From assembly GCF_021869535.1 (NCBI RefSeq), contig NW_026262678.1, forward strand, positions 558,001 to 622,000: a DNA stretch of 64,000 nucleotides, read 5' to 3'. The notes under the pieces are model-generated. The model saw only the letters and a program-made list of their open reading frames with translations. It was not told the DNA's origin and did no database searches. The stretch is from Mytilus californianus. Lineage: Eukaryota. A program made the position numbers and the translations under genes. Below are positions 7,587 through 59,600 of the stretch, one piece after another. Position 1 is the stretch's first letter. Each line of letters begins with the position of its first letter.

Positions 7587-7652
7587 ATGAGATGGATAAT
7601 TATGATTCTTACCAATATTCTCTGCTTGTTAGTTGTCACAGCTTATGAAATG
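7587..7652 (+). CDS. Gene 1 coding exon 1: signal peptide
   Basis: aaaATG, then MRWIIMILTNILCLLVVTAYEM, then donor GTATGT (phase 0). Confidence 0.85.
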
Positions 7653-10600
7653 GTATGTACATTCTTTGTCGAAGAAATGGTCACTAGCCAATTTGTTTAA
7701 AGCGTTGCGTAAAGTGCGTCCAATAAAGTTAGAAAATCACATGAAAGAAAAAAGATATATGACTATCTTAAATTTATATACAATATATTATTTTGACTTA
7801 TGTAATCGAATGTATTGGTCATTCTATCTGGTTTTCTTTATAACACACGTGCGTTAATGTAAATTGTCATGTATAATATACCTTTTTTTTCTGACACCAA
7901 ATACATTGATGGTGACTAATTTTCTCACTTTAAATATTTTCTAAGTTATTTGTTATTTGAATAGCTGTCTTGTCTTATTGAGTAAACATTTACCCCAATT
8001 TCCTTAAAGTTATATGCATGGGAAGTCGGGTATACATGTTTCTGCTGTACAAACAATCAGTGAAGCGGAAGTCCGCGATTAGAATTATAAAATGGCAGCC
8101 TTATACTTTTATTTGATTGTGTTCATAAACAAGCTAAATGGATACAATGTAATTAATTCTTATTTTGGAAAACTGATATTCGTTTCAGAAATTGGGTTAT
8201 CAAATAAAAGACGGAAATGTCATTTATGAGAAAGAGTTGGAAACGAATCGAGAAATGAATGTGTTAAAGATTCATATTCTTGCACACAATGAAGTTATGG
8301 AATCGTATTCGATGCAAGATTTTCAAAAGGTTTGTAACATCAAAGTTTTTGACAGAGATATTTTTACTCAAAACTTTAATAACACACCAAACCAATTGAT
8401 ACAAAAGTTGTTTACAAATATTCTAGACGGGGAATACCCTGACATTCATCTTGAAATTATGTCGTTTTACAAAAGACTAAATAGAAAACTGTTTATTGTG
8501 TCACTATATTACTTTTTTTTAAAGAATTGTCTTGTATGATAAAAAAACAACAGAGATACCAGGCTAATAATTGGGTACTTCAAGATTGTTTTCCATCTAC
8601 AAAAGACTCACCAATAACGTTTGAACAAAAAATTGTATAAAGCCAAAAAAAGTAAGACGTTGAAGAGCTTTAAGGGCTAACATTCCAAAAGGATTTACCA
8701 AATACATGTATGGTTATATATTCATCGAGTAAAAATGTTTGGTATTTCAAATAATTTCAAGTTTTACACACAGTTACAACTCTGGTGTTTAGCTTTTATA
8801 CAACGAGATGAATCAAGGTGAAAATCCATAGGCAATCACTATCGAGATGAATTAAGGTGAAAATCTATGGGCAATCACTATCGAGATGAATCAAGTGAAA
8901 ATCCATGGGCAATCACTATCGAGATGTATCAAGGTGAAAATCCATAAGCAATCACTATCGAGATGTATCAAGGTGAAAATCCATGGACAATCACTATAGA
9001 GATGAATCAAGGTGAAAATCCATGGGCAATCACTATCGAGATGAATCAAGGTGAAAATCCAAGGCAATCACAATCGATATGAAAATAATTACTAAATCTA
9101 AACAATTGTGTGTTGTTGTGTCATTGACTGATACCCCAAATTTCATTTTATTCAACAAACAAGAAGACGGTTACATATTATAATACTTTCTGTAACACAT
9201 TTTCTTTGATAATTTTTATTTCACAATTTGAATTCTATATGTTGGCAGAGTTAGAATAAGCTTTTTTCGGGAATATCATTCGGTTGAATTGTACTCCCTA
9301 CAGCTTAGTTAAAAGTAAATGATATGCTCATGTAGGAAGAGTAGCTATCAAAATTGTTGCCTGTATCACCAAAGTCCTTTATAAAAGGATGTATGTACTT
9401 GCAGACGAGTACAATCCACTGTATACATTTAACCGTTATCGTCTGTGTTTAAATAAATCTGTCGCCTGACGCCTCTAAGAACATTATTTGGTTTCAGTCC
9501 ATCGCACAACTAGTGCATATATTTGGATTCTTTTCATATTAGTTTTGTTAAAAGAAAATGACAGAACACGGAAAAATGAAGAAAATATATTATTTCTACA
9601 TGAATTTCACGTTTGTGTTACAGGGACAGCAGATCACATGCATTCCATCATTACATCAATGTAGGTTTCGGGAGATCAAAACAGAAAATAATGCAGGTGC
9701 TAGCCTGATTATGGAAACATTTATTCAAAGCTTGGTAAGAAATATGAAAATGTGAGCATGTAATCATGTTTATTCTATTCTTATCAATTTGAATATACTT
9801 TTGCAATAATCCGCTATTGTACGAAAAGTTCAGATCGACCAAGTATTTTTATCGAAAGGCTGAATATAAATATACCTGACCAATTGAAGTTATTCAATGA
9901 ATAGATCCGATAGATGGTAGTAGTCAAGAAAACAGTGAGAAGCAGAGGGGTAATTAATATTTTTCAGTGCAGACACTTCCATAGCAAAAGATTTATTTTG
10001 TAATAACTCGTAACCAACTGTTTACTTTCCATCAGGTAGTTATAATGACAGATTCAATCAAAATTATTGATATTCGTCAATAGGAGCAATGATCACATAT
10101 GCATAGGACATATTGGCAAGTTCATTGAAAGGGAAAGGTTTTGTTTAATTCTTGCATCTGTTTTCTTTCCTATGAATCCTATCAGGAATATGTAAACAGT
10201 TCCAGCGTATTCTAGTCAGCTAACTTCATATCAAACATGCTATAAACAATGTTATGGCTCAATGCATGAGTTGCGCTTAATATACTTGTTGTCTAATAGT
10301 TAACGTATTATGTATAACACAGTGCGGTGATTTTGTGGTAAATGCAACGAAAACCAGTAAGGAATTTAGATATATTGAACATTCGCACGGATTTTTCTGT
10401 CAAAAAAATCATATTGTATTCTTCTATATATATATCAATAAAACGTTGAATGATTTTACAAATTATCGATAAATATGTTGAATAATTTTGAACATGTTAG
10501 AAACGTAAATTATTTCTTGGTGAAAACTGATTAGTTTAATGTCCTGAACATCAATTTAGTTCATTTGACCCTACACTCTAAAAATGGTACTAATTGATAT

Positions 10601-13600
10601 ATTCGTTATTACTGAAAGTTTAATAAAAGTATTTATAGATTGAAGGCGAAACATTGAAAAAAAAATTAACTCAGGGTACACATTTAAGTATATCTGACGT
10701 TCCTGTAGATAGCATGAGATTTATTAAGTAGCTTATACTTCGAACTTCATATTGTAAAACGAGCATGTTTGGTAAATAAACATTAAGAACATGTGACAAG
10801 TATATTCAAATATCAATTTTTAGTTCAATAAAGGTTACAGTAAACCGGAAGCGCACACTACAATTGGGAGAGAGTTGTTTCATATGGATAAAAATGAAAT
10901 GGTTGACCAATATATACTTGAAGAAGATTTGAGAGAGTTTTACCACGGCTTTGGATTCCCTCTGTATAAGGAAAAGAAAATACTCAATGACGCTAAGATA
11001 TTTAATATCACCCGGTTTAAAGCAGGTACGTCTTTTTGACTTTAAAATGACATTCAGGCAGTGCATTTTGATCATACATAATCTATGAATCATAATGGAA
11101 AATTTGATTTTTTTTTTTTTTTCAATAAAATATATGTTAATCATTGAATTAACCGATGAGGCACTAGCAGGTACATATTTTTCAGGGATTTTACGTTTCC
11201 TCTTGTGTTTTCAGAGGTAAATAGCAAATATTTCGCACCATCTTTCTACAATAATGCTAATCATTCTGCCAAACAAATTTGGAAAATATTCATTTATTTT
11301 GTATGTTCGGTTTATTTGACTAAATAATCATTTACTTATTGTTCATCAACTTCAAGTTTTCCTATATAATTTTTTTTTCACATATTAACCTCTTGTTAAA
11401 CTTTCGTCACATTTTCTCAATAGCAACTAAACAAAACAAATAACTAAAACTTGAATTCTTCAAGTATTCAAATATTTATGCATCCTTTGCTTTCACATTA
11501 TTTGGGTTTGAACGTTCATGACGCAGATTAATCCAAATAACGCTTTGAAAACATCACTATTTAACAAATGGTTTGTTCATCATGAGTCGTCATTTGTAAA
11601 CGGTTTAGTAATTTGAATTCATCAACGCAAAACATAATCAAAAATAAAACAATAGGGCATCGTGCGACCTTCTACAGTAAGCAAAAACAATACCACATAG
11701 TATTGCATAAATGGAACCGACATGACAAAATAGTAATACTTGAACAAATGTAAAGCAATGCAGAAGAGAAAATAGTAGCCAATGACAAATACTCCTTGCT
11801 TTGAAAGACATAAAGGGAATGTGTGAGCGCTTAACATTACCCTAAACCTGGAACATATCAACAAACAGTGAAATTGAGTTGAAAAGTATTTGATCACACT
11901 GGCAAGCAGCAACATAAGAAATATCAAGCACAAAGAGAAGGTTTGGGGGAATCAAAATCCTCTACAACTCAAAGTTCTGACTAATTAACAAACCGTTTTT
12001 TCCAGATTGAAATACCAATAGGTACAACACAAATGGGTTTACTTTCAAGACGTCATAACAGTTTTGAAGCAGCATGGTCTTGTGCAAACTTAAACTATAA
12101 TATTCATTCTTAAAATGGGTGGTAAACAAGGTAATATTAAATGTCATGGTCAAACTTTTGAACATGCAAACTTAAAGTAAAACACATTTACCCATATATA
12201 AAAAGCTATACGGTAACCAAGGATTACTAATGATCCCACAACAAACATCCAGTTTTAAAACTAGACAATAAAGAGGAGCAACAACGTTACGCGACTACTA
12301 AGAATTGTAATATTTAGACGTTGACATGCTTTCACATACTTCAGTTGGTTAAATGCAAATTTCATTGAAAAAAATATGCAGTTAAAAGGTACAGGCTTTC
12401 TCATCTTTGCAAATGTTTTGAGACTGACTTCAATTGCTATCAACTTATAACAAAACGGTTGTGTTTTTCTCTGTTGAGCAATATGATGCAACTTATCCAT
12501 TTTTAACAGCAGATTAAGTCAAACATTTTTTTCCAGGAAGGCGTGTAAAACGAAGTTTTACAAGACTTGAAGTTGATTGCTATGGACAGTACCCAACAGT
12601 GAAGTATGGTGTAATTTCAGGAACATCTTCCAATCGAATTAAAATATGCAACGGGTAAGATACATTTTACACAAACATAAAAAGAACATTGCTGTTTGCT
12701 GTTTTTTTTTCCAATTTTGCGATTTTTGTAGTTATATATATGCTGTTTGATACTATTCATTGAGAAAAAAGGGCAAACAGAGGAAAAAAGTCCATCGCAA
12801 TTTGAAAATTTGCCCTTGTCCTTTTTCTACGACCGACTGTGATCACGTAATTGTATAAGAGGTGTCAAATAACATAGAGTCATAGTTATGCTTTTATTGG
12901 TATTTTTATATGAAACTAAATGATATCTTGAATATTTTAATAATCTTCTTGTCTACAATTTATTAAATTTACCTTATGTTTCTTTCGCTTTGAGTATGCC
13001 AAATAATGATATTTTTCTTTTTAGTTTAAAATAATGTTAAACATGTCATATATAAGATATGCTTTTTTTTTCAATTTCACGTCCCATTCTCAAGTCTGTT
13101 ATCTTTCATATCTTAGAAAATATATATGTTTAAGGTGTTTGGTTAAAACACGATTTAAAACCGTGTCATTTAAACGATATTTGAAATGCCTGAATTTGTT
13201 TGGTTTTTTTTTTCTCTTTTTTGTTGAAGTGGTCTGTTGATCAAATAAAGGAGTATGATCTTTCATATTCAAGTTTTAAGCGGATAGCTGATAAAAGATA
13301 CTAATGTTAATGCAATACAATGATGCATCCATCATCTGAATTTATATGTAAGTAATGTTTTTTTCCGTAATTTCTTCTGTAAGTTTTTTTCAGACAAGTG
13401 CTTAAGTCTCCACGTTTATTGGAGAAGCAAGGGTATGACGGAGTGAGGTAAAATGATATGTTTGTGTTCACAGTTTTGATCGTGTTGATGTCTAAAAAAG
13501 CACATTGAGATGCTTTTAATGCATTTTTGTTTAATTTTACATTCAAAAGTTATTTGTTTATTTTATAGAGCTGCACGAATTAATGGACAAATGGTGTTCC

Positions 13601-13719
13601 CAGATTGCGATAATGTTTCCATAACTTCATCTCTTGTTCGCATGTGTGTTTGCTGCCCTTATGTCACATACATCGATCTGACAAGAGATGATTGTGCATG
13701 CACAGAAATGGGGTTTTGA
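7587..13719 (+). CDS. Secreted BRICHOS-like precursor with furin site and 8-Cys C-terminal domain (262 aa, 6 coding exons)
   Basis: Exons 7587-7652, 8189-8329, 9624-9734, 10824-11025, 12537-12654 and 13569-13719. All introns are GT-AG with phases 0,0,0,1,2. They total 789 nt with no internal stop. Protein: MRWIIMILTNILCLLVVTA-YEM...SMQDFQKGQQITCIPSLHQCRF...VDQYILEEDLREFYHGFGFPLYK...GRRVKR-SFTRLEVDC...CVCCP...CACTEMGF*. Confidence 0.85.
8189..8329 (+). CDS. Gene 1 coding exon 2
   Basis: tttcag|KLGYQIKDGN...SMQDFQK|gtttgt, 141 nt, phase 0-0. Confidence 0.8.
8804..9083 (+). repeat. 39-bp minisatellite, about 7.2 copies, intronic
   Basis: Consensus cgagatgaatcaaggtgaaaatccatgggcaatcactat. Units start at 8804, 8843, 8882, 8920, 8959, 8998 and 9037. 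Confidence 0.95.
9624..9734 (+). CDS. Gene 1 coding exon 3
   Basis: ttacag|GQQITCIPSLHQCRF...FIQSL|gtaaga, 111 nt, phase 0-0. Confidence 0.85.
10824..11025 (+). CDS. Gene 1 coding exon 4 (absent from the ORF track)
   Basis: tttttag|FNKGYSKPEAH...NITRFKA-G|gtacgt, 202 nt, phase 0-1. Confidence 0.85.
12537..12654 (+). CDS. Gene 1 coding exon 5: furin site and start of the mature domain
   Basis: ttttccag|GRRVKRSFTRLEVDC...IKICN-G|gtaaga, 118 nt, phase 1-2. Confidence 0.85.
13569..13719 (+). CDS. Gene 1 last exon: Cys-rich C-terminus
   Basis: ttttatag|a then AARINGQMVFPDC...CVCCP...CACTEMGF-TGA. Confidence 0.85.
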
Positions 13720-13770: not shown

Positions 13771-13776
13771 AATAAA
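13771..13776 (+). terminator. Candidate polyadenylation signal of gene 1
   Basis: AATAAA about 50 nt after the stop codon. The motif is common in AT-rich DNA. Confidence 0.4.
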
Positions 13777-15944
13777 AAATATTACTTGTTATTCATGTAT
13801 TATTTGCATGTTGTTTTGTTGAACAAATGAGGTATTCAATTGGTATATCTGTAGAAAAAGTTAAACATAGATACTAGAACTTTGAATAATAAATTATCTG
13901 ATGCTGTTAACGGATATTTTACCATTTGAAGATGAATCTAAATATATATAAAATTGTGATCTTTTTATAACTTGATAACAATCCGAGATCATACCCTTCA
14001 ATGTAGCAAAAAGCTGCGTTTAATCTTTAAAATTGTTTCATATTTTCATATTTTGACTTCGTGTATGCCTTCTTTTATTTCAAGAAATCAGCCTCGATAC
14101 CGTATCATCTTGGATTCTACTACATTGCATTTGAAAATGACAATTATACTTTTTTACAAAGCTGCCTTACTTTCAAATCTTTCAAGTAATTTGCATAAAC
14201 AATGATACCATAAGATATACGGGACTAAGTTTGAACTACTAAGAGAAAACTATACAGCCAAATCAACCAGCGATCATATAAATACCAGTTATCTGTTATT
14301 TCCAGCGTAAAAAAATGTTCTCTCTTTGATAATTAACTGAAAAAACTATACAAAACAATAGCCGTATACATTGCATACAACACAATGGAAAGACATCAAA
14401 AAAGTTAGAATACCACTTGATTTGATCTTTACTTCAACAACCTCTGGCATGTCAAAGACTAAACCTTGTGCTGTCAAATTTTGGAGTGTTCTGCTCTCTC
14501 TACTTATTTAATATCCGACTTTGAGGAATGAATCAGTAAATCTTATCAAAGGAATAAATTACTTATAGAGAGGATCTAATCAATTTATCTAAACCAAAGA
14601 TAAAATGCTCTTATTCATCTGTATGTATTTTCTTTACGTTTTGAAAAAAGTAAAAAATAGGTTGGTCAACAGAGCAATGCCTTTGAAAACTACAAAGTAT
14701 CGTACTTTTTAACATTTTAAACAAACCAATCTAGTTGTATTCAAGAACGATGCTTGTCCTTGCTAAGGTTGTGTATAATTTGCCAACCGGGTTACATTTT
14801 CTTCATATGATATTGAAATATTAAGTGCATATAAGTGAATTGATTGTATTTCTTAATACTATCTATCACTCAATTTGAAAAAAAAGTTGATTAAAATTTT
14901 GTAGATTCATCATTGAGTTAATGTGACATGTTGGATATAAGTCACGTTTGTTAAAGAAAACATAGAATTACTAGCAGTGCTGAATTCAATTGTTTACTCT
15001 TATTGTCTGTTTCACATATTGGAATTAAATAAACTGGTAATAAACTGATTTTATCAACTTTTATTACAAAACATACTAGTCGAAACAAGATAATGGTCCT
15101 TTTACATCTAACTTTCTGAAGTTGTGAACCAGCTTAGTTGAGTATCTGCTAAATTAAATCAATTGTAGTAAATAAATCAAAATAAACAAACTGCAGGAAA
15201 CTTAAAAAGTATTGACACCGTTTGCGTTTCTTGTAATACATGCATTACTTTTCATGCAAATCCAAATTCCGTTGTTGTTTTGTACAGGTAAATTGCATTA
15301 AATGAAAAAGGCGAATAAAGCATAACAAACAAACAAAAAAGAAGCTAAAGGTACCAAATAGAATATTGAAACTCATCATTCCTACCGAAATAGACTACAA
15401 GCAGTTTGTATGAACAGAACCAAATTTACAGCAGCGAAAAGGTCTTAAAATGAACTGAAAGACTGAACATGACTTAAAAATGTATTACTAAGGTTTTAAA
15501 TTCATAAAATAATGAATTGTCTTTTTAATTATGTATCAACAACATTACATCATTATAACTTCAAAACCTAACGCTGACCTTTTGCAAATAACCTATTACA
15601 TGAAGCGAGTTGTTGTAAAAAAGTTAAATTGAGGTTGAATTACTGCTGAAATAGCGCATGCATCATGTTTATTGCCAAATCGTACCAAATAAACAATTTC
15701 ATGAACTGTTGTAACAGTACAATTACAACAAAGTACTGTGATAACATATAACAAACGGTCGCAGATACATTTGTATTTATCTATTTCCCATTTGTGTTGA
15801 CATCCCGCAGAATAGGGATCTAAGTCGATAGATTATTTTTTAATCATTTGCCAAATGTGTCAAAATGTAGTTCATGTAATGTTTTTAACATAAAATATCA
15901 CAAGTATTCAACACATAGCTTTTGTAAAAAAGTAGAATAAAAGA

Positions 15945-41600: not shown

Positions 41601-44600
41601 CCTGTTCATCATTGACCTAACAGTTCTATAAGAAGATAATTTAGAGCAGGTTTTTCATTTGCTGGCATTCTATGGGAATATTTGGGGATATCAATGCGCA
41701 TTGTTGTTGTAACAGTCTTGAAGCACAGGCATTGCCACTTTTGAGACAATCGTAGAAGGTGTTGAATTAGGAACGGAAATTCGATGGATGACTGTTACAT
41801 TTATGTTAGGAATGCTGGTTTATGAGCGCATGGAAATTTGGGAATTGTCAAATATTTAGTGTTCTTTCAATTCCTTACACTTATTGTCGTTAAATGGGTA
41901 TAGAGAAAATTAAATTAGACCGAAAGTCAATACAGTGAATAAAAATAACCATTACGGTATATTAACAAAAGATAGAACAGTCGAAGAACTCTTATACAAA
42001 CTTAAACAAGTCGACAGAAAGACATTAGTAAAACATAATGAATATATAACAATTATTGGGCAAATTCAGAATGATATAAGAAGTAAGTTAAGCCAAAGCA
42101 GGGGCAAGAATAATACACGATAATAAATATAAAGAAAACATGGACAATGAACATGCATATGATAGAAGATAAGAACAGCTCTCTCACAAGCATACACACC
42201 TTAACTGTAAAAAAAGAGCATACATCGCAGCCACTGGAACATTTCCTACTGCATTCATGCAGCACGAAAAGTAAATCCGGCAGTCAATTTTAAAAATAAG
42301 AAGATGTGGTATTATTACTAATGCACAACTCTCAACCAGCAACCACGTAGACGTTAGTTACTAAAGAGCACCATACGGCCTGCAACATTGAGAAAAACTT
42401 ATACCACAGAGCAAGCTTTGAAAGTCCCCGAAATGAAAACTGTAAAACTAACAGCTTAAAACATGTTCGAAACAATAACGAGAACACATGTTATATAAAG
42501 CAAATTACATGTTTCCGACTTTACTTGTCATTACTGGATTTGGCCATTTCTTATTATTCATAACAAAACAGGAACAAGTCTGCTATTGAAGAAGCGCGTT
42601 TAGTGTCCAATAGGACTGCCTACAACTTGTCTCTACATGTTATTGCCGAAACGTACATAGATGCTGTCAAGGAGAATATTTTAATTGTAATAATATCATC
42701 AAACTTCCAGTAAGCAAATCCAAAAGAAAGCTGTATACAAGTTACAGCAAGTAAATTGGAATCAGCTTTTGTAAACGACTATTTTAGCAAAAAGGACAGC
42801 TTTGGTGTTGGAAGTGTAGTGTACAGAGTCGTAAAGACAAAATTGCCATCCGAATTAAGGATCATTAAATGTACTTGAACATTTAAAAGAAATAATTGCA
42901 ATTCATGAATGAACGCAAGCACCACAAATCATTAAACAAAATATTACTAATAAAATGTATGCATGACAAACGATTGTAAAGACACTAAAGTTCTCATCAA
43001 TACTCTTATCTATGGAAACTGACGACAAGGTTTGTTTCACAGGGACCTACCAAAATTCTAATAGAAAAACAAAGGATATGGTACGAAATCAGTACATGCA
43101 CAGCAAAAAACACACACAAATCAAAGGAACAACGCTTTTTATTATTGTTCTTCGTCTCATTGTCTTAACGAGATCTTCAATTCCTTTTGTAGTCACGTTA
43201 TAAAATAGAGTAAACGTTTATTTTTTAAATATCACCATACTCGTTAATGCAATTTTTCCAGGGAATGTGATTAAACTATTACCTTTGTTTACAACAGGGA
43301 CAGACACCTCTTCATTATGCAGCTCGTAATGGATTAAAATACATGATATCAGTTTTGATGAACAAAGGATCAGACCCTAATAAGTCAGATATTAGTGTAA
43401 GTACTGTGATCGGCTAATAACATAATTATTATCCGTAAAGTGTTGTATAGACCATGTAGAATTTCTGCGATTTCCGTATCGACCAATGGTAGTAGATTGG
43501 AATTGATTCTTTTATCTGTTTTGCCATCTGCTTATATAGACGACATTCCATAAAGTGCATAAATCATTAATATAGTTGAGGTGTCTTGAAATTAATTGGG
43601 CGAAGGAGAAGAAAAAAAAAGAATTCCAAAACTCATAATATATAACCGTTTAATTATACATCCATTTTAAGTAAAAACCTCAAAAAGGTTGAATATTACA
43701 TATTTAGTTTAACTTATTTCTCTTTAATTATATGTTCGATGATTTCATAGATAGACAAAACCATTATAAAGACACGTGTCATGTTCATATATAGGCTGTA
43801 CAAAATTGTAATCCCTTAATGATGAATATAATATCAAAAGGATAGAATTAAAATAGTACGCAAAATTTAGGGGTAAATGACGGATTTTTTCTCATGTGAA
43901 TCTTATATATGAATTTGCCCTTTTCGTATTCTAATTTTGATTGAAACAGGTTTGAAGAATTAAATAAATGTTGAACGAAATCACCCTGGATTAGTAGCCA
44001 GTATCATCCATGATCATCAGTCACCGAGGTCCCCATCTCTTATAGCGTACTGTATCTTGCAAATGTAAAGATATTTCCATGCACTCTTTGTTCTTTTTTA
44101 CAATACTAAAACTGGTTTTAACTTGAAAGATAATATTTATTTTTAAGTTTTTCCTGTCGTACAATAATGTATAACATACAGAGGAGGGTCATATTTATAT
44201 ATTTATCAAAGGTATTGGTCACATGACGTAGTTACGGTCAAGTGATTGTTTACTATAAACACGTGTGTGTGTGTTTACATCAAGCACATGGTGTGTGTTT
44301 ATGTTCTATTTGATTGGATGGCATATACCCGCAATGCGGTTTTTACGGGTATATGCGCTCATGAGATTCGTGAAAAGCATGATTAAGTATTACTTAAGGG
44401 GTTCGTTTGAGAAAATAAAGTTATTCGAAGTTTGCCTATAGTTAACGTAGCAGCAGTTCGTTATTGTGGTATGTCTGACTCCGAGAAACTTCTAGATTCT
44501 GACCATGAATCTTTGCCTGGTCCTAGTGTACATTCGTTGCCTGATGGTAGTTCTGCACATCATACTGGTAATAACGACTTGGTGGATACATTCTCGCTGT

Positions 44601-47600
44601 TTAAAACCTATCTTGACGGGAAGATCGCTACTCTTCACAAAGACTTGGCCGTTGGCAATGAGAACTTCGCTACCAAACTCAAGCAAGAAGTGTCAGTTAA
44701 ACTTAAAGGTGAGGATAACCAGATACAGTTCAATTTCAATTGTGAAATTATGGCCGACCTTGTTAAGCTTCAGAAGCGTATTCCTGATGAAGATGCAGCA
44801 TGTCTTAAATTGGTATCTGGTGCTATCCTCAAAGTTAAGAAGCGTAATAAACTCATCCGCATTGCAGACAAATCTCCCGCAGGCTGGAAAACCGTCCGCG
44901 AATATGAGAGTGACGACCTTGCCTCCGACTCAGAAGATAAGAAACGCATTCGTTCTGCAGAAAGCCGTGCCATTAGGAGTATCAAGGAAAAGAAAATACC
45001 TCATCCTTATAGAACCGTTACAGCTACTGTTTCTGCTCCTCCTGCTCCAATGCCCAATCAACACAATGTTCGACAAAACAATTATCAACAGCCGCCCTTT
45101 CGGACCAGCAGACGGAGGGAACCCTCATCTCATGACATCTGTTACAACTGCAACCAGCTTGGTCACTGGCGAACTCAGTGCCCCCTTTTCAGTACAAAAC
45201 CAGCTGTCCCAGGGACATCAAGGCAACAGAGTTAATGATAAGTATTTTGATACTACTTTTTTAGATGAAAGCAATCTTTACGGACAGTTTGAACTGTTTC
45301 TGTCACATGCTAAATATTTTGATAATATTGATATTTCATCTGTTGCAAAAGGGGTAAAATATAGTTTACGCAAGCATATACAATTCTGGAAACATATAGG
45401 TGCAAATGAATTTGTTATCAATACTATCCAACATGGTTACGTTATTCCATTTTTGCAGACTCCTACATCTATGTCATTTAAGAATAACAAATCTGCAAAT
45501 GTCCATTCTAAATTTGTAAATGAAGCAATTTCAGAATTACTGAATATCGGATGTGTTATTGAAACTCCATTTCAACCGTTTGTTGTAAATCCGCTAAGTG
45601 TTGCAGTTCAAAGTTCGGGCAAAAAACGTCTGATTTTAGATTTAAGTGAACTGAATGTTTTTATTAAAAAAGAAAGAATAAAATTTGAGGACTGGAAAGT
45701 GGCTTTAAATTATTTCACAAAAGATTGCTATCAATTTAAATTTGATCTTAAGTCTGGATATTTTCATTATGACGTATGTACTAAACAACAAACATATTTA
45801 GGATTTTGCTGGAACGAAAAATTATACTGTTTTACAGTGTTAGCCTTTTGGTCTATCATCTGCTCCATATCTATTCACAAAATGTCTACGACCAATCGTA
45901 AAATATTGGCGAGAAAATGGCGTAGATATTGTACTTTACTTAGATGATGGACTTGGAATGGGTAAAAATAAACAAGAAGCTTCCGAATGTTCATCTTTCG
46001 TGAAAACCTCCTTGTTAGAAGCAGGGTTTTTAATTAACATGGATAAATCTATTTTTGAGCCAGTACAATGTTTAGAGTGGTTAGGTTTAGTTTGGGATTC
46101 GTCTGATTTTTCAATTAGTATATCAGATAGACGGATTGATAATACACTTACATCATTGGTTGATATTTTGAATAACTTTCCTAATTTCACAGCACGTAAA
46201 TTGGCTCAGGTAACGGGAAAGGTAATTTCTATGTGTCCAGTCATGGGTAACATAACAAGTTTAATGACCCGTTATTTACACTGGGCAATTGAATACAGAG
46301 TAAAGTGGGATTTAAAGTTAATATTGGAATGTCCTGATTGTGTATTTAATGAGCTCACATTTTGGCTGAATAACATTAAAAGATTGAACAGAAAACATTT
46401 AGCAGGTTATTCTTTTCCTCACGTGCTTGTATATTCTGATGCCAGTAACGTAGCTGCTGGTGCTTACTCGATAGATATTGACTCTAATATTTTTCATCAG
46501 ATGTGGACTTTACAAGAGTCCCTAAAGAGTTCTACATGGAGAGAACTTCAAGCTATTTTGTTGGCTTTGATGTCGTTTAAGAACCGTTTAAGAAATAAAT
46601 GTGTTAAATGGCATACAGATAATAATAACTGTGTTTCCATTGTTCAGAAAGGAAGTGCAAAAGTACATTTACAAGAGATAGCTATTAATATTTTTAAGTT
46701 GTGTTCTGAATTGAATATTACTTTAGATGTTGTTTGGATCCCGAGATCTAAGAATACAAAAGCTGATTATATTTCTAAAATGATTGATATAGAAGACTGG
46801 GGAACAAATAAAGAATTTTTTAAATTAGTAGATAATATGTGGGGTCCGCATACTGTGGACAGGTTTGCGAGTAATTTTAATAAAAAATTACCAAGATTTA
46901 ATTCCAAATTCTGGAATCCAGGTGTTGAAGCAGTTGATGCGTTCACGCAAAATTGGAAAAATGAAGTAAATTGGATTGTTCCTCCTATTTCCGTTGTCTG
47001 TAGAGCAATCAAACATTTGATTTTATGTAAGGCTAGAGGCACTTTGATAGTTCCAAAGTGGCCTTCCTCGTCATATTGGACAATGATTTTTAAAAAAGGT
47101 TCGTATTTGCAACCCTATGTAACTGATGTTTTAGAATTTCAACCAAATCAGAACATTTTTATTCATGGTATGAATAATAAGTCCTTGTTGGGATCTTCTG
47201 AATTCGTTTCTAGTGTTTTAGCTATTAGATTGAACGCTCAGTTCATGTAAGAATTTACGACAAGGCTGTTGAGCAAGGTCGTATGGTAAAGACAAGGCCA
47301 ATCTAATGGCAAGGTCGTATGCTGATGACAAGGCCAAATTAAATAGGCAAGGTCTCACCTGACATGGCCAGTGTGAAAAATAAATCTGGCAAGGTCATTT
47401 AAATATATTGTAAGCTAGTAGTAGTATAGTAGATTATATTTCTATTTGATATGCACGTTTTTCAGATATTTTTTCATGTGGAGTCTGGAAATCCTTGCCT
47501 AAGCCAGTTGACCAAGATTTATCATCTTTATCTAACTGCCTACCTGAGTTCTGTCTCCATTCGAAAGCCGAGAATACCAAAAGAAAATACTCTTATGCAT

Positions 47601-50600
47601 TTAATAATTTCTGTAAGTGTTGTAATAACTATTCTTATGTTAAACCTTTACCAGCTTCAGATTTTTATGTTTCATTGTACTTAATACACATATCAAAGAC
47701 ATTTAACTCGTATGCTAAGGTTGAAGAAGCATACTATTCAATAAGCTGGGCTCACAAACTAGCTGGCTTTTCTAATCCGTGTAATTCACAGTTGTGTATA
47801 TCGGTTAAAGAAGGAGCTCATAGAAAGATTGGACCTATTATTGTAAATAAAAAAGAACCAATTACGCCAGATATTTTAAAGAAAATTGTTAATAAATATG
47901 GTAAAGAATGTAACAATCTTATAGAAATTAGAATTTGTTGTATGTGTCTTATTAGTTACGCAGGGTTTTTAAGATTTTCTGAAATGGTAAATTTAAAAAG
48001 ATCTGATTTAAAATTTGCTGATACACATGTCTCTTTGCTCATACAGAAAAGCAAAACTGATCGTTATAGAGAAGGCACACACGTTTTAATTGCTAGAACA
48101 GATACACAAACATGCCCTGTTAATATGTTGGAGAAATATTTGTTATTATCCAATATAGATGCATCATCTTCAGATTATATATTTAGATCCATGTATTTAT
48201 GTAAAAAATCTAGATCTTATAGACTGAGAGGTTTTAAACCTTTGTCATATACTAGAGTTAGAGAAATTATATTATCAGCTCTGGAATCTATCGGTTTAGA
48301 TAAGTCAAAATTTGGATTACATAGCTTGAGATCAGGTGGAGCTACTGCAGCTGCATCAGCTGGCATTCATGATAGATTATTTAAGAAGCATGGTAGATGG
48401 GCTTCAGATAAAGCAAAAGATGGCTATGTAAGAGAAAATGTTAAAGAAAAACTGACAGTGTCTAAAAGTTTGGGAATTTAATTTTTATAGATATACTATA
48501 TATGTGTATTATTCTTTGCTCAGATCTGCTTGGCTTTCTTTGTCTTTCGAAAGGCTGCTACACCTGTAGGCACACTTATCCTATTTATGTGTTGTTTTAT
48601 TTATTAAATAATTTATATTCGTTTGAGCTGGCGAATTAGAATATAAATATATTTATTAAAGGTATTGGTCACATGACGTAGTTACGGTCAAGTGATTGTT
48701 TACTATAAACACGTGTGTGTGTGTTTACATCAAGCACATGGTGTGTGTTTATGTTCTATTTGATTGGATGGCATATACCCGCAATGCGGTTTTTACGGGT
48801 ATATGCGCTCATGAGATTCGTGAAAAGCATGATTAAGTATTACTTAAGGGGTTCGTTTGAGAAAATAAAGTTATTCGAAGTTTGCCTATAGTTAACGTAG
48901 CAGCAGTTCGTTATATGTTTACCCACCCACCCACCCCTTTTATGAGTTGGTTATTGTTAACGTGGGCATATACATATATTACACTATATTAATATGAATT
49001 TTTCCTCTTTTGTAGATAGTTTTTGATTGTGTTACTGTATATTCTATTATATGATTGGATTGGAAGTGTGCTTGTCTGAATTATAGTGAATGACTTTTGT
49101 TTGAAGAATTGTGAATGTAAATAATATTAAAGGCTGCTACACCTGTAGGCACACTTATCCTATTTATGTGTTGTTTTATTTATTAAATAATTTATATTCG
49201 TTTGAGCTGGCGAATTAGAATATAAGTTCAAATAAATGTCCGACCCGAGGAAGATTTTTCTTTTGGCAATCTTGACAACCCAGGGTGTGTTATATGACAA
49301 GAAAAGCTTTCGAAAGTGTATTTTGTATTTAGGTCAACAAGAATTAATATTATTTTCTGCAAAGATTCGATCATATCAAAGTTGGATTTTCTTGTTTGAT
49401 GCTTATAGGAATAGAAACTCCCAACGGCTAAGTTTTAAGCTGAAATAAGTCTATGAATCTAGATATAAACGTTATTTATTTCTCACCAGTTAACTTAAGA
49501 AATTACTGCGATTACATAAAGCAATAAGCAAACCAATTGTATCGAAACATTTTTTTTTTTTTTTTTTGGGGGGGGGTATTTTTTATTTAGGGGGGGGGGG
49601 GTCAATACATTTTAACCGCGGAAAAGCAAATTATTTTTTTAACAATTTAAAAGGAATTTCTTCAGAATTATTGTTTTTTTTCTCTTTTGTCTGGAAATAC
49701 ATTTTTCCTGCAAAACTTGAAAATCAGATAATGCCCCTCTTTTAATGCAGATCTAAGAGAAGTTCACATTATTTGTGTTGATAATCAAACTGCGATTTAA
49801 AACGTTTTGTAAGCTTAAGTAAGTCAATCTAATAAATGAAATGAAATTGAGAATGGAAATGGGGAATGTGTCAAAGAGACAACAACCCGACCATAGAGCA
49901 GACAACTGTTTCTATCCAAAACGTTTAACGAATATTCAAGATGAAAAGGTGTACAGATAACCCCCAGTTAGTTTGCAATTTCACGATTTTCTCATCTTCA
50001 ACATTAAATGTACCTGTACTATTGTTTCCAAAGGACCAATTGTAAAGTCCTTAAGTGTAAGGTACCTACTTGTGGTGAGATATAAATCAATTATGTTAAT
50101 ACTTCTGGAGTCATACCTTCTAATGATAAATACAAAATATAGAGGTAAAGCCCTGCAGTGATGTACTGTTTATGGAAAAATATAAATCAATTCTCTAAAA
50201 TTATTGGGTGTCATACTTAGTTTTTTTTATAAGCACAATAAAACACAATTTGATTACAATACAGATAATGTGTCCAAACTTCGCTTACCATATTTTGACT
50301 ATTTTATTTATAATGTCTGTTTTGTTCACGCATCGATGTAAATATAACGGCATTTGATAAGACTGTCGTACAAGTGAGAGGTTTAGCGCTATAAAACCAG
50401 GTTCAATCCACCATTTTCTACATTTGAAAATGCCTGTACCAAGTCAGGAATATGACAGTTGTTGTCCATTCGTTTGATGTGTTTTGTCATTTGATTTTGC
50501 CATGTGATTACGGACTTTCCTATTGAATTTTCCTCGGAGTTCAGTATTTTTGTGATTTTACTTTTTACAAGGATTTGACATCACTCCATTCTCCTTTCTG

Positions 50601-56600: not shown

Positions 56601-59600
56601 TTCATGGTGTTAGGGATTGTTTGCAATTGACTTATTACAGTTCGACATAAATGCAGTCCATTATGTGTTGTAATGTTTCAACGAGTAATTCGAATCATCC
56701 ATAATTTTATATTTCTTGCGGCATTTACTTATTTGTAATGCATATTAACGTTTTATTTTTTGAAAAACAAATGATTGTAAATTTATTGCAGACTCTGTCA
56801 TGCTGAAATGAACTCAGTGTTATCATTCAAAGTGTATTCTGGGATTAATATATTGAAAAATGGATGGATAGATAAATAAATATAGACTTTTTTCGTTTAT
56901 AATTGTGTACACAAATCAGAACACTGGCTTCTCGTTTAAATTGTATTTCGTTATTTTTCATGTCGGGGCCTTTTATAACTTGTTTTGTCGTGTGGGTTTT
57001 GCTCAGTGTTGAAAGCCACTACGGTGACCAATTATCGCATACATTTTATAGACACTTGGCTTTCAAATATATGGCTTTGAGCGTTCCTGATGAAGGTAAA
57101 CCCAGCAAATGCGTCTGACGCACAAAATCTATATAGAGTTGTTTTTATTTTTTATCGTCGTCAGTTGGTCTCTTGTGGACAGTTGTCTCATTGGCAACCA
57201 TACCACATTTCATAATGTTGAAAATGAATATACCGTACCTTTTATATCATTTAATTCAACCATTACATAAATATGTATCGTCACTGGTTTTTCTCCAGTA
57301 TGCACACTTCTTTGTAGTGTTGCCTAAGGTACCCACTAAATACTACTATTAATATTTGTATCAAATTTTCTGCCAGAACTAAAAAAAGAACTTAGAGGAC
57401 TGGGTATTGAACATGTCAGTGAACTACAAGACCTATTGCACGAAAGTTTCCAGAAGTGTTTTTGGAACAGGGTATATTTGGTGGGTCCATATTCAGTCGG
57501 AAAAAGCTGCTTAGCGAAAATTCTTGTTGGAGAAAAGGTGCCAATAACAAGGCAATCTACTGATGGTATATGGATATACAAGGGAAGAGCTGGAATGGAC
57601 GTTGACAAGAAAGAATGGGTATATTTTCCAAAAGGTTTGTGCTTTTGTATATTTCAACGATTGGTAATTAGCTTGTTCTTTATGTGGGGCTTATCTTCTC
57701 ATTAACATGAATACAGTATGTGTTTGATGCAACGCTCTGGAACAGTTTAATTATGTGGTTGTTAGTGATAGTCTCTGTTAAATTGTGACCAAGTTTTGAT
57801 GAACTGATAGTGTACATGTTTGTTTATTTTTGACGAGCGGCTACTGATCATGATTAATAATTTGTCGTTTAATACTATCTATCTGACAATAACAAACAAA
57901 ATTTGTTCATGAAAAAATGTAAAACAAATGACAAAATGTTAGTTGGCGTAGGAAGAATTTTTAAACAGTGCGTCGTTACATTTTGAATTAAAATGATTTG
58001 TACAGACCACCGAATTAAGATAATTTTGGTGCGTTTCAAAAATAATTTAAATAATGTATGTTTGAAGGTAACGCAATCACAGAAGTACTGACAAACATGC
58101 TAATTTCGATTTCCACCGGTGAAGCAAAGAGTTCCGTAAGAGAGGAAATCGTGTACAATAGTCCTTTAGATGAAACTACTCTACGAGCCAGTCCCGTGTT
58201 AAGTACAGTACATGGGCATCGTCAAAGTTCGACATCTCCAGTCGAAAAATATGAGGGCAATCAAAATAAAAATGAAGGTGATACTTTTACTACCCGATTA
58301 CATGAAAGGGAAAACCTAGATAATTATCCAAGTGATTGTATATCTCTTGGCACATATGAAGAAGAATATAATACAATCGAAGACAAAATGAAGGAAAAAC
58401 AGCTTACAGGTGAACGACCATCAAACACCAACACAAACCTTGCAGAGAGTGAATGGGTAGAGAACATTACAAACAGTATGTCTCAAAGACAAATTCACCG
58501 GCTGATTGTTAAGGCAGTGGAGGAAGGTAAATATAAACAGAAGGTGGTACCTATAGACATCTGGGACTTTGGAGGTCAGAAGGACTACTACATGACTCAT
58601 CAGCTATTCATCACAAGCAGAGGCATATTTGTATTGATGTTTAATGGCTCTATTGATCTACACAAGCATATGCCCGACCTTAACTTTCTTCCAGGGCACT
58701 TTGGGAAGCCAACAATTTCAGGTACATTAATTACATAAAGTTTTTTGTCCAGTGATTGGTTATTATTAATGACTTTGGTTGTCAATTCGTAAATTGTATT
58801 GATGTATCAAATTAAATGTAATTATTTTCGAACGAATATTTTTGAAATATTTTAACAGTTTTCACAGGGACAAATCGTAGCAACATTAATATTATCACGA
58901 TTTTTATTCTATCTTTGATTAAAAAAAAATCAAATGATCACTCATGTGTTGGTTCGCATCCTCAAAACATAACATTTCAATTGCTTGTGGCATTTTGGCA
59001 AATTGAGCTTTAAGTGAACGTGTAACCAAGTAAATACAGGCAACAGTAATATACCGCTGTTCAATAGTCATAATTCGATTAAGCAAAAACAAATTCGGGT
59101 TTCAAACTAAAACCGAGGGAAACACATCAACTATAAGAGGAAAATAACGGAACAACAGAAACACTGAACAACAACAAAAGCAAACGCCAAAATATAGAAA
59201 CGGACTGTAGACAACAACTGCTATATTCCTGACTTGGTACAGGACATTTTAAGAACAAATGGTGGGTTGAACCTGGTTTTATGTCTAGCCAAACCTCCCG
59301 CTTATATTGCAATTTCAAAAATACTGCTAAAATGACAACAAGTAAAATTGATATAAAAATTGACAGCGAATATATATTTTTTAATCGATTTGTTAACCTT
59401 TCTTTATTAGAAACGTGTTGTGAAATAGGTATTTTCAATGTTAGTGTTCTTTAAAAAAAATTTTCAGAGGGAAAAAATGGATGCGTGTGTGTTACTGTTT
59501 TTTTTTTCATATAGGTAGTGTTGTTGTAAAAGAAATAGTATGATGTGTTGTATAATTTTAGTTTATCTGATACACTGGGTCAACTCAATTTTGACGTATT

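What the first reader, a model, noticed from the sequence alone, without database searches (positions are those of the whole stretch)
7587..13719. Gene invisible to the ORF track: signal peptide, BRICHOS-like pro-domain, furin site and Cys-rich peptide
Seen: six exons splice in phase into 262 aa. Known: BRICHOS domains show D-F-x-x-G followed 16 residues later by Cys (here D66 and C82) and end with an I/L-x-x-F-C-x-G-x-P-x-Y segment (here LREFYHGFGFPLY). They chaperone aggregation-prone beta-rich C-terminal clients released by furin, as in proSP-C, Bri2/ITM2B, chondromodulin and the polychaete antimicrobial precursors arenicin and alvinellacin. Inference: this is a soluble bivalve BRICHOS precursor with a client I cannot place in a known family, so it is a candidate new defence, signalling or matrix peptide system.
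Basis: partly seen in the sequence, partly recalled or inferred. Interest (0 to 1): 0.8.

Follow-up and report, generated by a model that had tools for sequence, protein, structure and literature searches.

The report
Mussel BRICHOS-like secreted peptide precursor gene
This is a real, transcribed six-exon California mussel gene for a secreted precursor in which a chaperone-like BRICHOS-type domain comes before a furin-type cleavage site and an 83-residue, eight-cysteine peptide of unknown function; it belongs to an uncharacterised gene family found so far only in Mytilus mussels.

Summary
The six exons (7587-13719, +) have GT..AG borders and give 262 aa. All five junctions appear in spliced contigs of three public runs, and three of them also in raw stranded RNA-seq reads. 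The window is identical to Mytilus californianus assembly GCA_021869535.1. The model equals the database protein named 'uncharacterized protein LOC127732853', so the gene is annotated but unstudied.

About 55 relatives were found, every named one from Mytilus. They share a signal peptide, a two-Cys pro-domain, an R-x-K-R site and a 75-93 aa peptide with 8 or 9 Cys.

Pfam does not call BRICHOS: there is no hit for this protein, and the best family member scores 13 bits (E 0.11). The fold evidence does. An AlphaFold2 model (pLDDT 77) shows the BRICHOS core topology, with D66 at the end of strand 2 and C82 in strand 4. ESM Atlas matches for residues 20-165 are BRICHOS or OAF clusters (TM 0.63-0.76), against 0.51-0.54 for LolA-like and unnamed folds.

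The helix-2 cysteine, highly conserved in BRICHOS, is absent from the whole family; C75 in strand 3 probably replaces it. The peptide matches nothing known. The architecture is closest to Out-at-first (OAF).

Function is untested; defence is the leading guess. First readers noted similar BRICHOS/furin genes elsewhere in this genome.

The parts
7587..7652 (+). Exon 1: start codon and signal peptide. Residues 1-22, with predicted cleavage after V-T-A19.
   Evidence: junction 7652|8189 in contigs of X1-X3. Mean Kyte-Doolittle hydropathy of residues 4-19 is 2.68. AF2 helix 2-15. SignalP was not available.
8189..8329 (+). Exon 2: residues 23-69, forming strands b1', b2', b1 and b2 of the BRICHOS-like domain. 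D66 (8318-8320) ends b2.
9624..9734 (+). Exon 3: residues 70-106, forming strands b3 and b4 and helix 1. C75 is at 9639-9641 and C82 at 9660-9662, on facing positions of the b3-b4 hairpin.
10824..11025 (+). Exon 4: residues 107-174, comprising a low-confidence loop, strand b4', helix 2 (140-147, no cysteine), strand b5, and the conserved N169-I-T sequon in the linker.
12537..12654 (+). Exon 5: the proprotein-convertase site R175-R-V-K-R179 (12539-12553) and the first 34 residues of the mature peptide, starting at S180 (12554).
   Evidence: The linker 166-181 has pLDDT below 50.
12553..12561 (+). Nine bases missing in one transcript allele (run X1). This is an in-frame loss of S180-F181-T182 directly after the cleavage site, together with G174E.
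   Evidence: (tables 5 and 5c).
13569..13719 (+). Exon 6: residues 213-262 of the mature peptide (six of its eight Cys) and the TGA stop (13717-13719).
13888..13893 (+). Probable poly(A) signal AATAAA; a second copy lies at 13771-13776.
   Evidence: An X1 contig runs 294 nt past 13611, which would end near 13905 if it is collinear. This is an inference.

Best explanation
The locus is an intact, transcribed Mytilus californianus gene, on record as LOC127732853. It encodes a 262-aa secreted pre-pro-protein. Residues 1-19 are a cleavable signal peptide. Residues about 20-160 fold as a BRICHOS-superfamily domain, with six consecutive antiparallel strands, then helix 1, a strand, helix 2 and a last strand. 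This domain keeps the conserved Asp (D66, end of strand 2) and the strand-4 Cys (C82), but has lost the helix-2 Cys. C82 most likely pairs instead with C75, which sits directly opposite it on strand 3. A disordered linker carries R-R-V-K-R. I infer that a furin-type convertase cuts there in the secretory pathway and releases S180-F262. That product is an 83-residue, beta-rich peptide with four disulfides, whose most conserved and most hydrophobic part is the strand pair around C239-x-C241-C242 and C255-x-C257. By analogy with other BRICHOS proproteins, the pro-domain would keep this aggregation-prone cargo soluble until release. Shown here: gene structure, splicing, transcription, family conservation of every module, and the predicted fold. 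Inferred: signal cleavage, convertase cleavage, disulfide pairs, chaperoning. The biological role is untested. A fast-evolving secreted effector (host defence) is my leading guess, at about 35-40%.
For: Gene and RNA: (window identical to GCA_021869535.1 over 23,719 overlapping bases).

Family.

Fold: the AF2 model has pLDDT 77 and the element order E22-30, E33-42, E47-52, E61-66, E71-76, E81-86, H95-107, E125-132, H140-147, E153-158. This matches the BRICHOS core described in PMC9714404.
- ESM Atlas shape search of my own model: the top four rows are gastrokine-2, a mixed BRICHOS/OAF cluster, ITM2 and OAF.
- For residues 20-165, query-normalised TM is 0.76, 0.74, 0.72 and 0.63 to BRICHOS/OAF clusters, against 0.51-0.54 for the best other folds.
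- Language-model features score 0.95 for the whole protein (221 of 256 shared, BRICHOS/OAF cluster) and 0.89 for the domain alone (gastrokine-2).
- UniRef names family member P0030 a 'BRICHOS domain-containing protein'.

Cleavage site: R-x-K-R is found in 24 of 27 full-length members, and it lies in a linker with pLDDT below 50.

Cargo: the Cys framework is conserved. P0028 lost the equivalents of C241 and C255 together, which fits nested C241-C255 and C239-C257 pairs.
Against: Pfam PF04089 does not reach its threshold. P0045 has no hit at E<=10, and only one of about 33 members scanned hits at all (13.1 bits against a 25-bit cutoff).

The family HMM finds no BRICHOS chain among PDB sequences.

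The Cys pair that reviews call strictly conserved (PMC10182729) is incomplete: there is no Cys between residues 83 and 187.

The MSA behind the model comes from one genus only, and pTM is 0.51, so the arrangement of the two domains is not reliable.

No protein-level data exist for cleavage or secretion.
Confidence: 0.75

Rival explanations
1. The family is a mussel-specific offshoot of Out-at-first (OAF) and not an independent BRICHOS lineage. It would then act like OAF, as a secreted developmental, signalling or endocytosis-related factor, and not as a defence peptide. OAF is itself a BRICHOS protein, so this overlaps with the main explanation.
For: The architecture and size are the same as OAF as described in PMC9714404: signal peptide, BRICHOS domain with the b1'/b2' extension, convertase site, and a long mature polypeptide with four disulfides (70 aa in OAF, 83 aa here), for a total of about 270 aa. 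OAF clusters rank 2 and 3 by features (0.94 and 0.93). They also appear in every structure list.
Against: Pfam OAF_N and OAF_C give no hit at E<=10 for this protein or for the mature peptides. Structural alignments to OAF clusters cover only residues 3-179, not the cargo. For the domain alone, gastrokine and ITM2 score higher than OAF. OAF keeps the helix-2 disulfide, and this family does not. OAF's mature polypeptide is described as highly conserved between human and Drosophila, whereas this is a multi-copy, fast-evolving family.
Confidence: 0.2
2. The N-terminal domain is a LolA/ependymin-type lipid- or ligand-binding half-barrel, not a BRICHOS chaperone. The protein would work as an uncleaved two-domain secreted binder.
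Against: For residues 20-165, TM is 0.72-0.76 to BRICHOS clusters against 0.53-0.54 to LolA-like ones. Ependymin scores 0.31/0.37 against gastrokine-2 at 0.46/0.63. The sequence-feature search returns only BRICHOS/OAF families. The conserved Asp at the end of strand 2, the Cys 16 residues later, the conserved R-x-K-R site and the Cys-rich C-terminal cargo are BRICHOS proprotein hallmarks that LolA and ependymin lack.
Confidence: 0.08
3. The gene is a drifting, functionally dispensable copy in a birth-and-death family. It is still open and transcribed but is no longer under selection.
For: dN/dS against the M. coruscus orthologous locus is about 1.2 overall (211 codons). That orthologue has no detectable exon 6 within about 5 kb beyond the point where homology to the window ends. 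The only close paralogue in M. californianus (LOC127732837) has a frameshift in exon 2 and a TAA in exon 3. Transcript variants are 8 non-synonymous to 2 synonymous, plus an in-frame deletion. Expression in X6 is low: 10 reads in the roughly 6% of the run that was read.
Against: The frame is intact over six exons, with all splice sites canonical, all eight cargo Cys and both pro-domain Cys kept, the cleavage site kept, and correct splicing in at least three samples from two studies. Against the paralogue lineage the pro-domain shows purifying selection (dN/dS 0.44). The value near 1 may come from decay on the M. coruscus side. High dN/dS and indels in the mature region are also what a diversifying effector shows.
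Confidence: 0.1

Closest known systems
Out at first (OAF), shown to be a BRICHOS protein by Sanchez-Pulido & Ponting 2022 (PMC9714404)
   Same: Both are soluble secreted proteins of about 270 aa. Both have a signal peptide, a BRICHOS domain with the extra N-terminal strands, a furin-type site, and a long mature polypeptide with four disulfides and paired beta-strands. OAF clusters are among the nearest by features and by shape.
   Different: There is no Pfam OAF_N or OAF_C match. The cargo is not aligned to OAF in structure searches. The helix-2 disulfide is kept in OAF and lost here. OAF's mature polypeptide is highly conserved between human and Drosophila (PMC9714404), whereas this family is multi-copy, found so far only in Mytilus, and fast-evolving.
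Gastrokines (GKN1-3) and ITM2/Bri2 BRICHOS domains
   Same: These are the best structural matches to residues 18-168. Gastrokine-2 gives TM 0.63 normalised by target, with 140 residues at 3.0 A. ITM2 gives TM 0.76 normalised by query for residues 20-165. Gastrokines are also signal-peptide-bearing soluble proteins.
   Different: No sequence-profile match reaches threshold. According to PMC9714404, Bri2 is a type II membrane protein that releases a 23-residue peptide. From my own knowledge, not tested here, gastrokines carry no large Cys-rich cargo after a furin site. Here the cargo is 83 residues with 8 Cys.
Chondromodulin-1 / tenomodulin
   Same: All have a BRICHOS domain and are BRICHOS pre-pro-proteins, which are usually processed by proprotein convertases. 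AlphaFold places their mature part as a separate domain (PMC9714404). The D-F-Q-x-G ... C spacing resembles chondromodulin, and from my own knowledge its mature part is Cys-rich; neither point was tested here.
   Different: From my own knowledge, they are type II transmembrane proteins of vertebrates.
Polychaete BRICHOS-AMP precursors (arenicin, alvinellacin, nicomicin, capitellacin)
   Same: [quoted passage not shown] The alvinellacin precursors are a multigene family, studied for the contrasting evolution of the peptide and its chaperone (PMC5431198, abstract listed).
   Different: From my own knowledge, those peptides are short cationic beta-hairpins. The mussel peptide is 83 aa, with net charge -1 and pI 5.0. 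The family ranges from pI 4.7 to 9.1, so a membrane-lytic AMP mechanism is not implied. The review states that BRICHOS-AMPs are known only from polychaetes.

Membership tests
BRICHOS domain (Pfam PF04089; features listed in PMC9714404 and PMC10182729) | Sequence profile match above the Pfam gathering score (25 bits) | tested here: not met
   P0045 has no hit at E<=10. The best family member, P0006, scores 13.1 bits at E 0.11 over profile positions 8-81 of 91. UniRef calls one member (P0030) BRICHOS domain-containing, but Pfam does not hit it.
BRICHOS domain (Pfam PF04089; features listed in PMC9714404 and PMC10182729) | Fold: central sheet b1'-b2'-b1-b2-b3-b4, then helix 1, b4', helix 2 and b5 | tested here: met
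BRICHOS domain (Pfam PF04089; features listed in PMC9714404 and PMC10182729) | Conserved Asp at the end of strand 2 | tested here: met
   D66 is the last residue of E61-66. The Q-D-F motif is kept in most family members shown; a few close relatives (P0048, P0050) have Q-N-F.
BRICHOS domain (Pfam PF04089; features listed in PMC9714404 and PMC10182729) | Conserved disulfide between strand 4 and helix 2 | tested here: not met
   C82 lies in strand 4, 16 residues after D66. There is no Cys between residues 83 and 187, and the full-length family members checked have exactly two pro-domain Cys, both before helix 1. C75 faces C82 across the b3-b4 hairpin (register 75+82 = 76+81), so a replacement disulfide is inferred.
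BRICHOS domain (Pfam PF04089; features listed in PMC9714404 and PMC10182729) | N-terminal signal peptide or signal anchor | tested here: met
   The N-terminus is hydrophobic (mean hydropathy 2.68). V-T-A at positions -3 to -1 is conserved in the family. AF2 predicts a helix at 2-15. This is a heuristic only, because SignalP was not available.
BRICHOS domain (Pfam PF04089; features listed in PMC9714404 and PMC10182729) | Proprotein-convertase site between the domain and the mature polypeptide | tested here: met
   RRVKR lies at 175-179. R-x-K-R is found in 24 of 27 full-length members, and it sits in a segment with pLDDT below 50. Cleavage itself was not tested.
BRICHOS domain (Pfam PF04089; features listed in PMC9714404 and PMC10182729) | Mature polypeptide with antiparallel strands tied by nested disulfides | tested here: inconclusive
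   Strands E236-241 and E255-259 carry C239/C241 and C255/C257. P0028 lost the C241 and C255 equivalents together.
Out at first (Pfam PF14941 OAF_N + PF22873 OAF_C) | Profile matches to OAF_N and OAF_C | tested here: not met
   No hit at E<=10 for P0045 or nine other family members, none at E<=1 for the members scanned earlier, and none at E<=10 for 25 mature peptides.
Out at first (Pfam PF14941 OAF_N + PF22873 OAF_C) | Architecture: signal peptide, BRICHOS domain, furin site, and a ~70-aa mature peptide with four disulfides | tested here: met
   compared with the description in PMC9714404.
Polychaete BRICHOS-AMP precursors | Short cationic beta-hairpin antimicrobial peptide at the C-terminus | tested here: not met
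   The mature peptide is 83 aa, with 8 Cys, net charge -1 and pI 5.0.
Chondromodulin/tenomodulin | Type II transmembrane anchor upstream of BRICHOS | tested here: not met
   Only about 19-21 residues precede the domain, and they look like a cleavable signal peptide.

The most novel reading that the evidence does not exclude
Mytilus mussels carry an expanded, lineage-specific family of BRICHOS-chaperoned effector peptides. M. californianus alone has at least eight loci on three contigs. This would be the first such family outside annelids. Its ~80-residue, four-disulfide cargo would be a new host-defence or toxin-like peptide class. Its BRICHOS domain would have moved the otherwise strictly conserved strand-4/helix-2 disulfide to a strand-3/strand-4 bridge, which would be a natural experiment on how that disulfide controls chaperone assembly.
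Probability: 0.3. Interest if true: 0.65.

Novelty: new variant of a known kind. Interest (0 to 1): 0.5.

Why it matters
According to a 2023 review, BRICHOS domains are defined by one Asp and two Cys. A whole family that keeps the fold and the Asp but relocates the disulfide tests what that bridge is for.

For mussel biology, the family adds an unstudied set of secreted, furin-released, Cys-rich peptides. They show expansion, indels, high non-synonymous change and frequent pseudogenes, which is the pattern usual for immune effectors. This is in a genus already known for many peptide families.

The one literature trace found is an unnamed 'BRICHOS domain-containing protein' listed among the genes up-regulated in M. 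galloprovincialis digestive gland after feeding on toxic algae (PMC4203926). Whether it belongs to this family is unknown.

Tried and rejected
- **Pfam on single exons:** nothing at E<=10, because the pieces are too short.
- **Word search with exon 4:** no candidates, because the tool's length window excludes full-length kin. The exon-4 phmmer search against 1.84 billion representatives then opened up the family.
- **Family HMM against PDB sequences:** only chance-level hits. The mature-peptide HMM gave none.
- **Pfam on 25 mature peptides:** only noise, such as Cys_knot at E 0.11 in one member.
- **Foldseek against PDB, with both models:** nothing below E 1e-3.
- **Atlas feature search with the mature peptide alone:** no usable hit.
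- **Possible seventh exon at 13394-13447:** it is 54 nt, has AG/GT borders and an open frame, but appears in no read or contig, so I rejected it as part of the main transcript.
- **Paralogue in the window:** none.
- **Called genes nearby:** none within 10 kb either side.
- **dN/dS contrast between mature peptide and pro-domain:** it points towards faster cargo evolution (1.52 against 0.44) but is not significant (Fisher p = 0.08).
Full report
**Observation.** Read directly, the six proposed exons each have an AG acceptor and a GT donor and join in phase to 789 nt, which is 262 codons plus TGA. Their coordinates are 7587-7652, 8189-8329, 9624-9734, 10824-11025, 12537-12654 and 13569-13719 on the plus strand. 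The bacterial-style ORF list shows only fragments of the gene and no ORF of 120 aa or more there.

**Transcription and splicing.** One look-up of public runs gave one raw-read RNA-seq run from the same study as the probable source sample (X6) and three runs kept as contigs (X1-X3, two samples, another study). I laid these on window:7612-13611, which respects the 6,000-letter limit. All five junctions appear at exactly the predicted positions in spliced contigs: 7652|8189, 8329|9624, 9734|10824, 11025|12537 and 12654|13569. X6 adds two raw reads each for the last three junctions. Its first mates all lie on the minus strand, as expected for plus-strand RNA in a standard stranded library. Depth is confined to the exons. 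A candidate extra exon at 13394-13447 is open and in phase but has no read support.

The contigs also carry variants. Two are synonymous and eight are non-synonymous (I52T, N92K, Q135T, K157N, G174E, Y192N, G202E, A214T). In X1 there is also a 9-nt in-frame deletion that removes S180-F181-T182, immediately after the cleavage site.

**Identity.** A phmmer search with exon 4 against 1.84 billion representatives opened a family. Two word searches followed, one with a full-length hit and one with the family alignment. One hit, P0045, is named 'uncharacterized protein LOC127732853 [Mytilus californianus]' and is 100% identical to my model over all 262 residues. The gene lies at JAKFGE010000029.1:565587-571719 of GCA_021869535.1, and the window is identical to that record over all 23,719 overlapping bases. 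So the gene model is already public, but it is unnamed and unstudied. No other gene is called within 10 kb. Elsewhere in the window there are only a tyrosine-recombinase element at 44-48.5 kb and a Roc-COR gene at 58-61 kb.

**The family.** About 55 proteins were found. Every named one comes from M. edulis, M. galloprovincialis, M. coruscus, M. californianus or M. trossulus, and a few come from unnamed transcriptome assemblies. All are 'uncharacterized', except one that UniRef calls 'BRICHOS domain-containing protein'.

They share:
- a signal peptide ending V-T-A;
- a pro-domain with exactly two Cys;
- a conserved F-Y-x-x-F-x-Y-P-L-Y-K-E-K-K block;
- an N-I-T sequon;
- R-x-K-R, found in 24 of 27 full-length members;
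- a 75-93 aa C-terminal peptide with the framework C-22-C-14-C-12-C-1-C-0-C-12-C-1-C, or a 9-Cys variant of it.

The pro-domain core is the most conserved part (71% mean pairwise identity). The cargo is less conserved (45%, or 39% without the Cys columns). These searches depend on shared words or on a single short exon, so absence outside Mytilus is not shown.

**Is the pro-domain BRICHOS?** By sequence profile, no. Pfam gives nothing for P0045 at E<=10, and a single sub-threshold hit in the family (P0006, 13.1 bits, E 0.11, profile positions 8-81 of 91). The family HMM finds no BRICHOS chain among PDB sequences.

By fold and by language-model features, yes.
- AlphaFold2 with a 44-sequence family alignment gave pLDDT 77. 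The element order is E22-30, E33-42, E47-52, E61-66, E71-76, E81-86, H95-107, E125-132, H140-147, E153-158.
- That is the core b1'-b2'-b1-b2-b3-b4-helix 1-b4'-helix 2-b5 that Sanchez-Pulido and Ponting define for BRICHOS domains (PMC9714404).
- D66 closes strand 2 and C82 lies in strand 4, as in the canonical domain.
- A shape search of this model against ESM Atlas representatives returns gastrokine-2, a mixed BRICHOS/OAF cluster, ITM2 and OAF as its first four rows.
- For residues 20-165, the Atlas's own model gives TM 0.76, 0.74, 0.72 and 0.63 to those families, against 0.51-0.54 for DUF4412, LolA-like and unnamed folds.
- Feature similarity is 0.95 for the whole protein (BRICHOS/OAF cluster, 221 of 256 features) and 0.89 for the domain (gastrokine-2).

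**The departure from BRICHOS.** Reviews state that the domain's only highly conserved residues are one Asp and two Cys, and that the Cys pair links helix 2 to the sheet (PMC10182729). This protein has no Cys between residues 83 and 187, and the full-length family members checked have only the two Cys that lie before helix 1. In the model, C75 (strand 3) and C82 (strand 4) sit at facing positions of one hairpin (75+82 = 76+81). I therefore infer a relocated strand-3/strand-4 disulfide. I file the domain as a divergent BRICHOS-superfamily variant, not as a Pfam-defined member.

**The cargo.** S180-F262 is modelled with pLDDT 79-92 as a beta-rich unit. It has no match in Pfam (including OAF_C), in PDB sequences or in Atlas features. 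Its fold was not searched on its own, so I cannot say the fold is new. Its most conserved and most hydrophobic stretch spans I-T-S-x-L-V-x-x-C-x-C-C-P-x-V-T. One member, P0028, lost the equivalents of C241 and C255 together. This fits nested C241-C255 and C239-C257 bridges between strands 236-241 and 255-259, which is the arrangement described for BRICHOS cargos. Net charge is -1 and pI is 5.0. Across the family, pI runs from 4.7 to 9.1, so this is not a typical cationic antimicrobial peptide.

**Evolution.** In a maximum-likelihood tree, the window gene and its M. coruscus orthologue sit in a long-branched, fully supported clade. That clade also holds a second paralogue lineage (P0048, P0055, P0050).
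- The M. californianus member of the second lineage, LOC127732837, lies 1.57 Mb away and is broken by a frameshift in exon 2 and a TAA in exon 3.
- The M. coruscus orthologous locus contains exon 3, although its gene model skips it. Homology stops at window position 13194, and no exon 6 is found in the roughly 5 kb of that locus beyond that point.
- Nei-Gojobori dN/dS against that orthologue is about 1.2 overall.
- Against the M. coruscus paralogue it is 0.44 in the pro-domain and 1.52 in the cargo. The contrast is suggestive but not significant (p = 0.08).

This is birth-and-death evolution with a constrained pro-domain and a fast cargo.

**Mechanism and comparison.** The best-supported reading is a secreted pre-pro-protein. 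The signal peptide is removed. The BRICHOS-like domain shields a beta-prone, Cys-rich C-terminal polypeptide. A furin-type convertase cuts at RRVKR in the disordered linker and releases the 83-residue peptide. The cleavage, the chaperoning and the function are all inferences.

The nearest known architecture is OAF: signal peptide, BRICHOS domain, furin site and a 70-aa mature polypeptide with four disulfides. However, OAF profiles do not match, OAF keeps the canonical disulfide, and its cargo is not alignable to this one. Polychaete BRICHOS-AMP precursors share the logic but carry short cationic hairpins. A review states that such AMPs are known only from polychaetes (PMC9756803). No paper in the searchable library describes this mussel family.

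**Earlier notes of this scan.** First readers flagged the 83-aa peptide in this same window, and they flagged two other BRICHOS/furin precursor genes on other pieces of this genome. Those notes are unchecked, and I did not use them as evidence.

**Verdict.** This is a new variant of a known kind. The gene is already annotated as uncharacterised, and its function remains open.

Noticed in passing
window 8804-9083: A tandem array of a 39-nt unit (7.2 copies, 91% matches) lies inside intron 2.
   Followed up: no
window 12537 and 12553-12561: A transcript allele in run X1 carries G174E and an in-frame 9-nt deletion that removes S180-F181-T182. That would be the first three residues of the predicted mature peptide, which would then start with R-L-E-V-D.
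   Followed up: partly
window 13394-13447: A 54-nt stretch with AG/GT borders and an open, in-phase frame (17 full codons: QVLKSPRLLEKQGYDGV) could be a cassette exon between exons 5 and 6. No read or contig in four runs includes it.
   Followed up: yes
window 11212-11295: Contigs of X1 and X3 cover part of intron 4 and then run on for 255 letters unlike the window from position 11294. One X3 contig joins 11010 to 11295 without splice-site ends. This is probably a repeat or another locus.
   Followed up: no
L002 8979-9121 and 9911-10024 (M. californianus JAKFGE010000029.1, about 1.57 Mb from the gene): The paralogue LOC127732837 (P0055) has a frameshift in a GA-repeat of exon 2 and a TAA at the codon matching Q81 in exon 3. 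Its database model therefore starts at an internal Met and lacks a signal peptide. It is probably a pseudogene.
   Followed up: partly
L005 (M. coruscus CACVKT020007548.1): The orthologous locus contains exon 3 (7876-7989, 87% identical), which the deposited model P0001 skips. Homology to the window ends at window 13194 (L005 12231). No exon 6 is found in the remaining roughly 5.2 kb of the locus, which contains no N.
   Followed up: partly
window 44432-48481: A run of long plus-strand ORFs. The last one (47495-48478) matches the Phage_integrase tyrosine-recombinase family (E 1.9e-11).
   Followed up: partly
window 58058-61188: Two plus-strand ORFs match Roc (E 2e-7) and COR-A (E 8e-8, below the Pfam cutoff). 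They are probably exons of a ROCO-type GTPase gene, unrelated to the finding.
   Followed up: no
family alignments A1/A3: Most family members have a ninth cargo Cys (S-C-N where this gene has S-S-N). That gives an odd number of cysteines and so possibly a free thiol or a covalent dimer. The 8-Cys state recurs in several clades.
   Followed up: no
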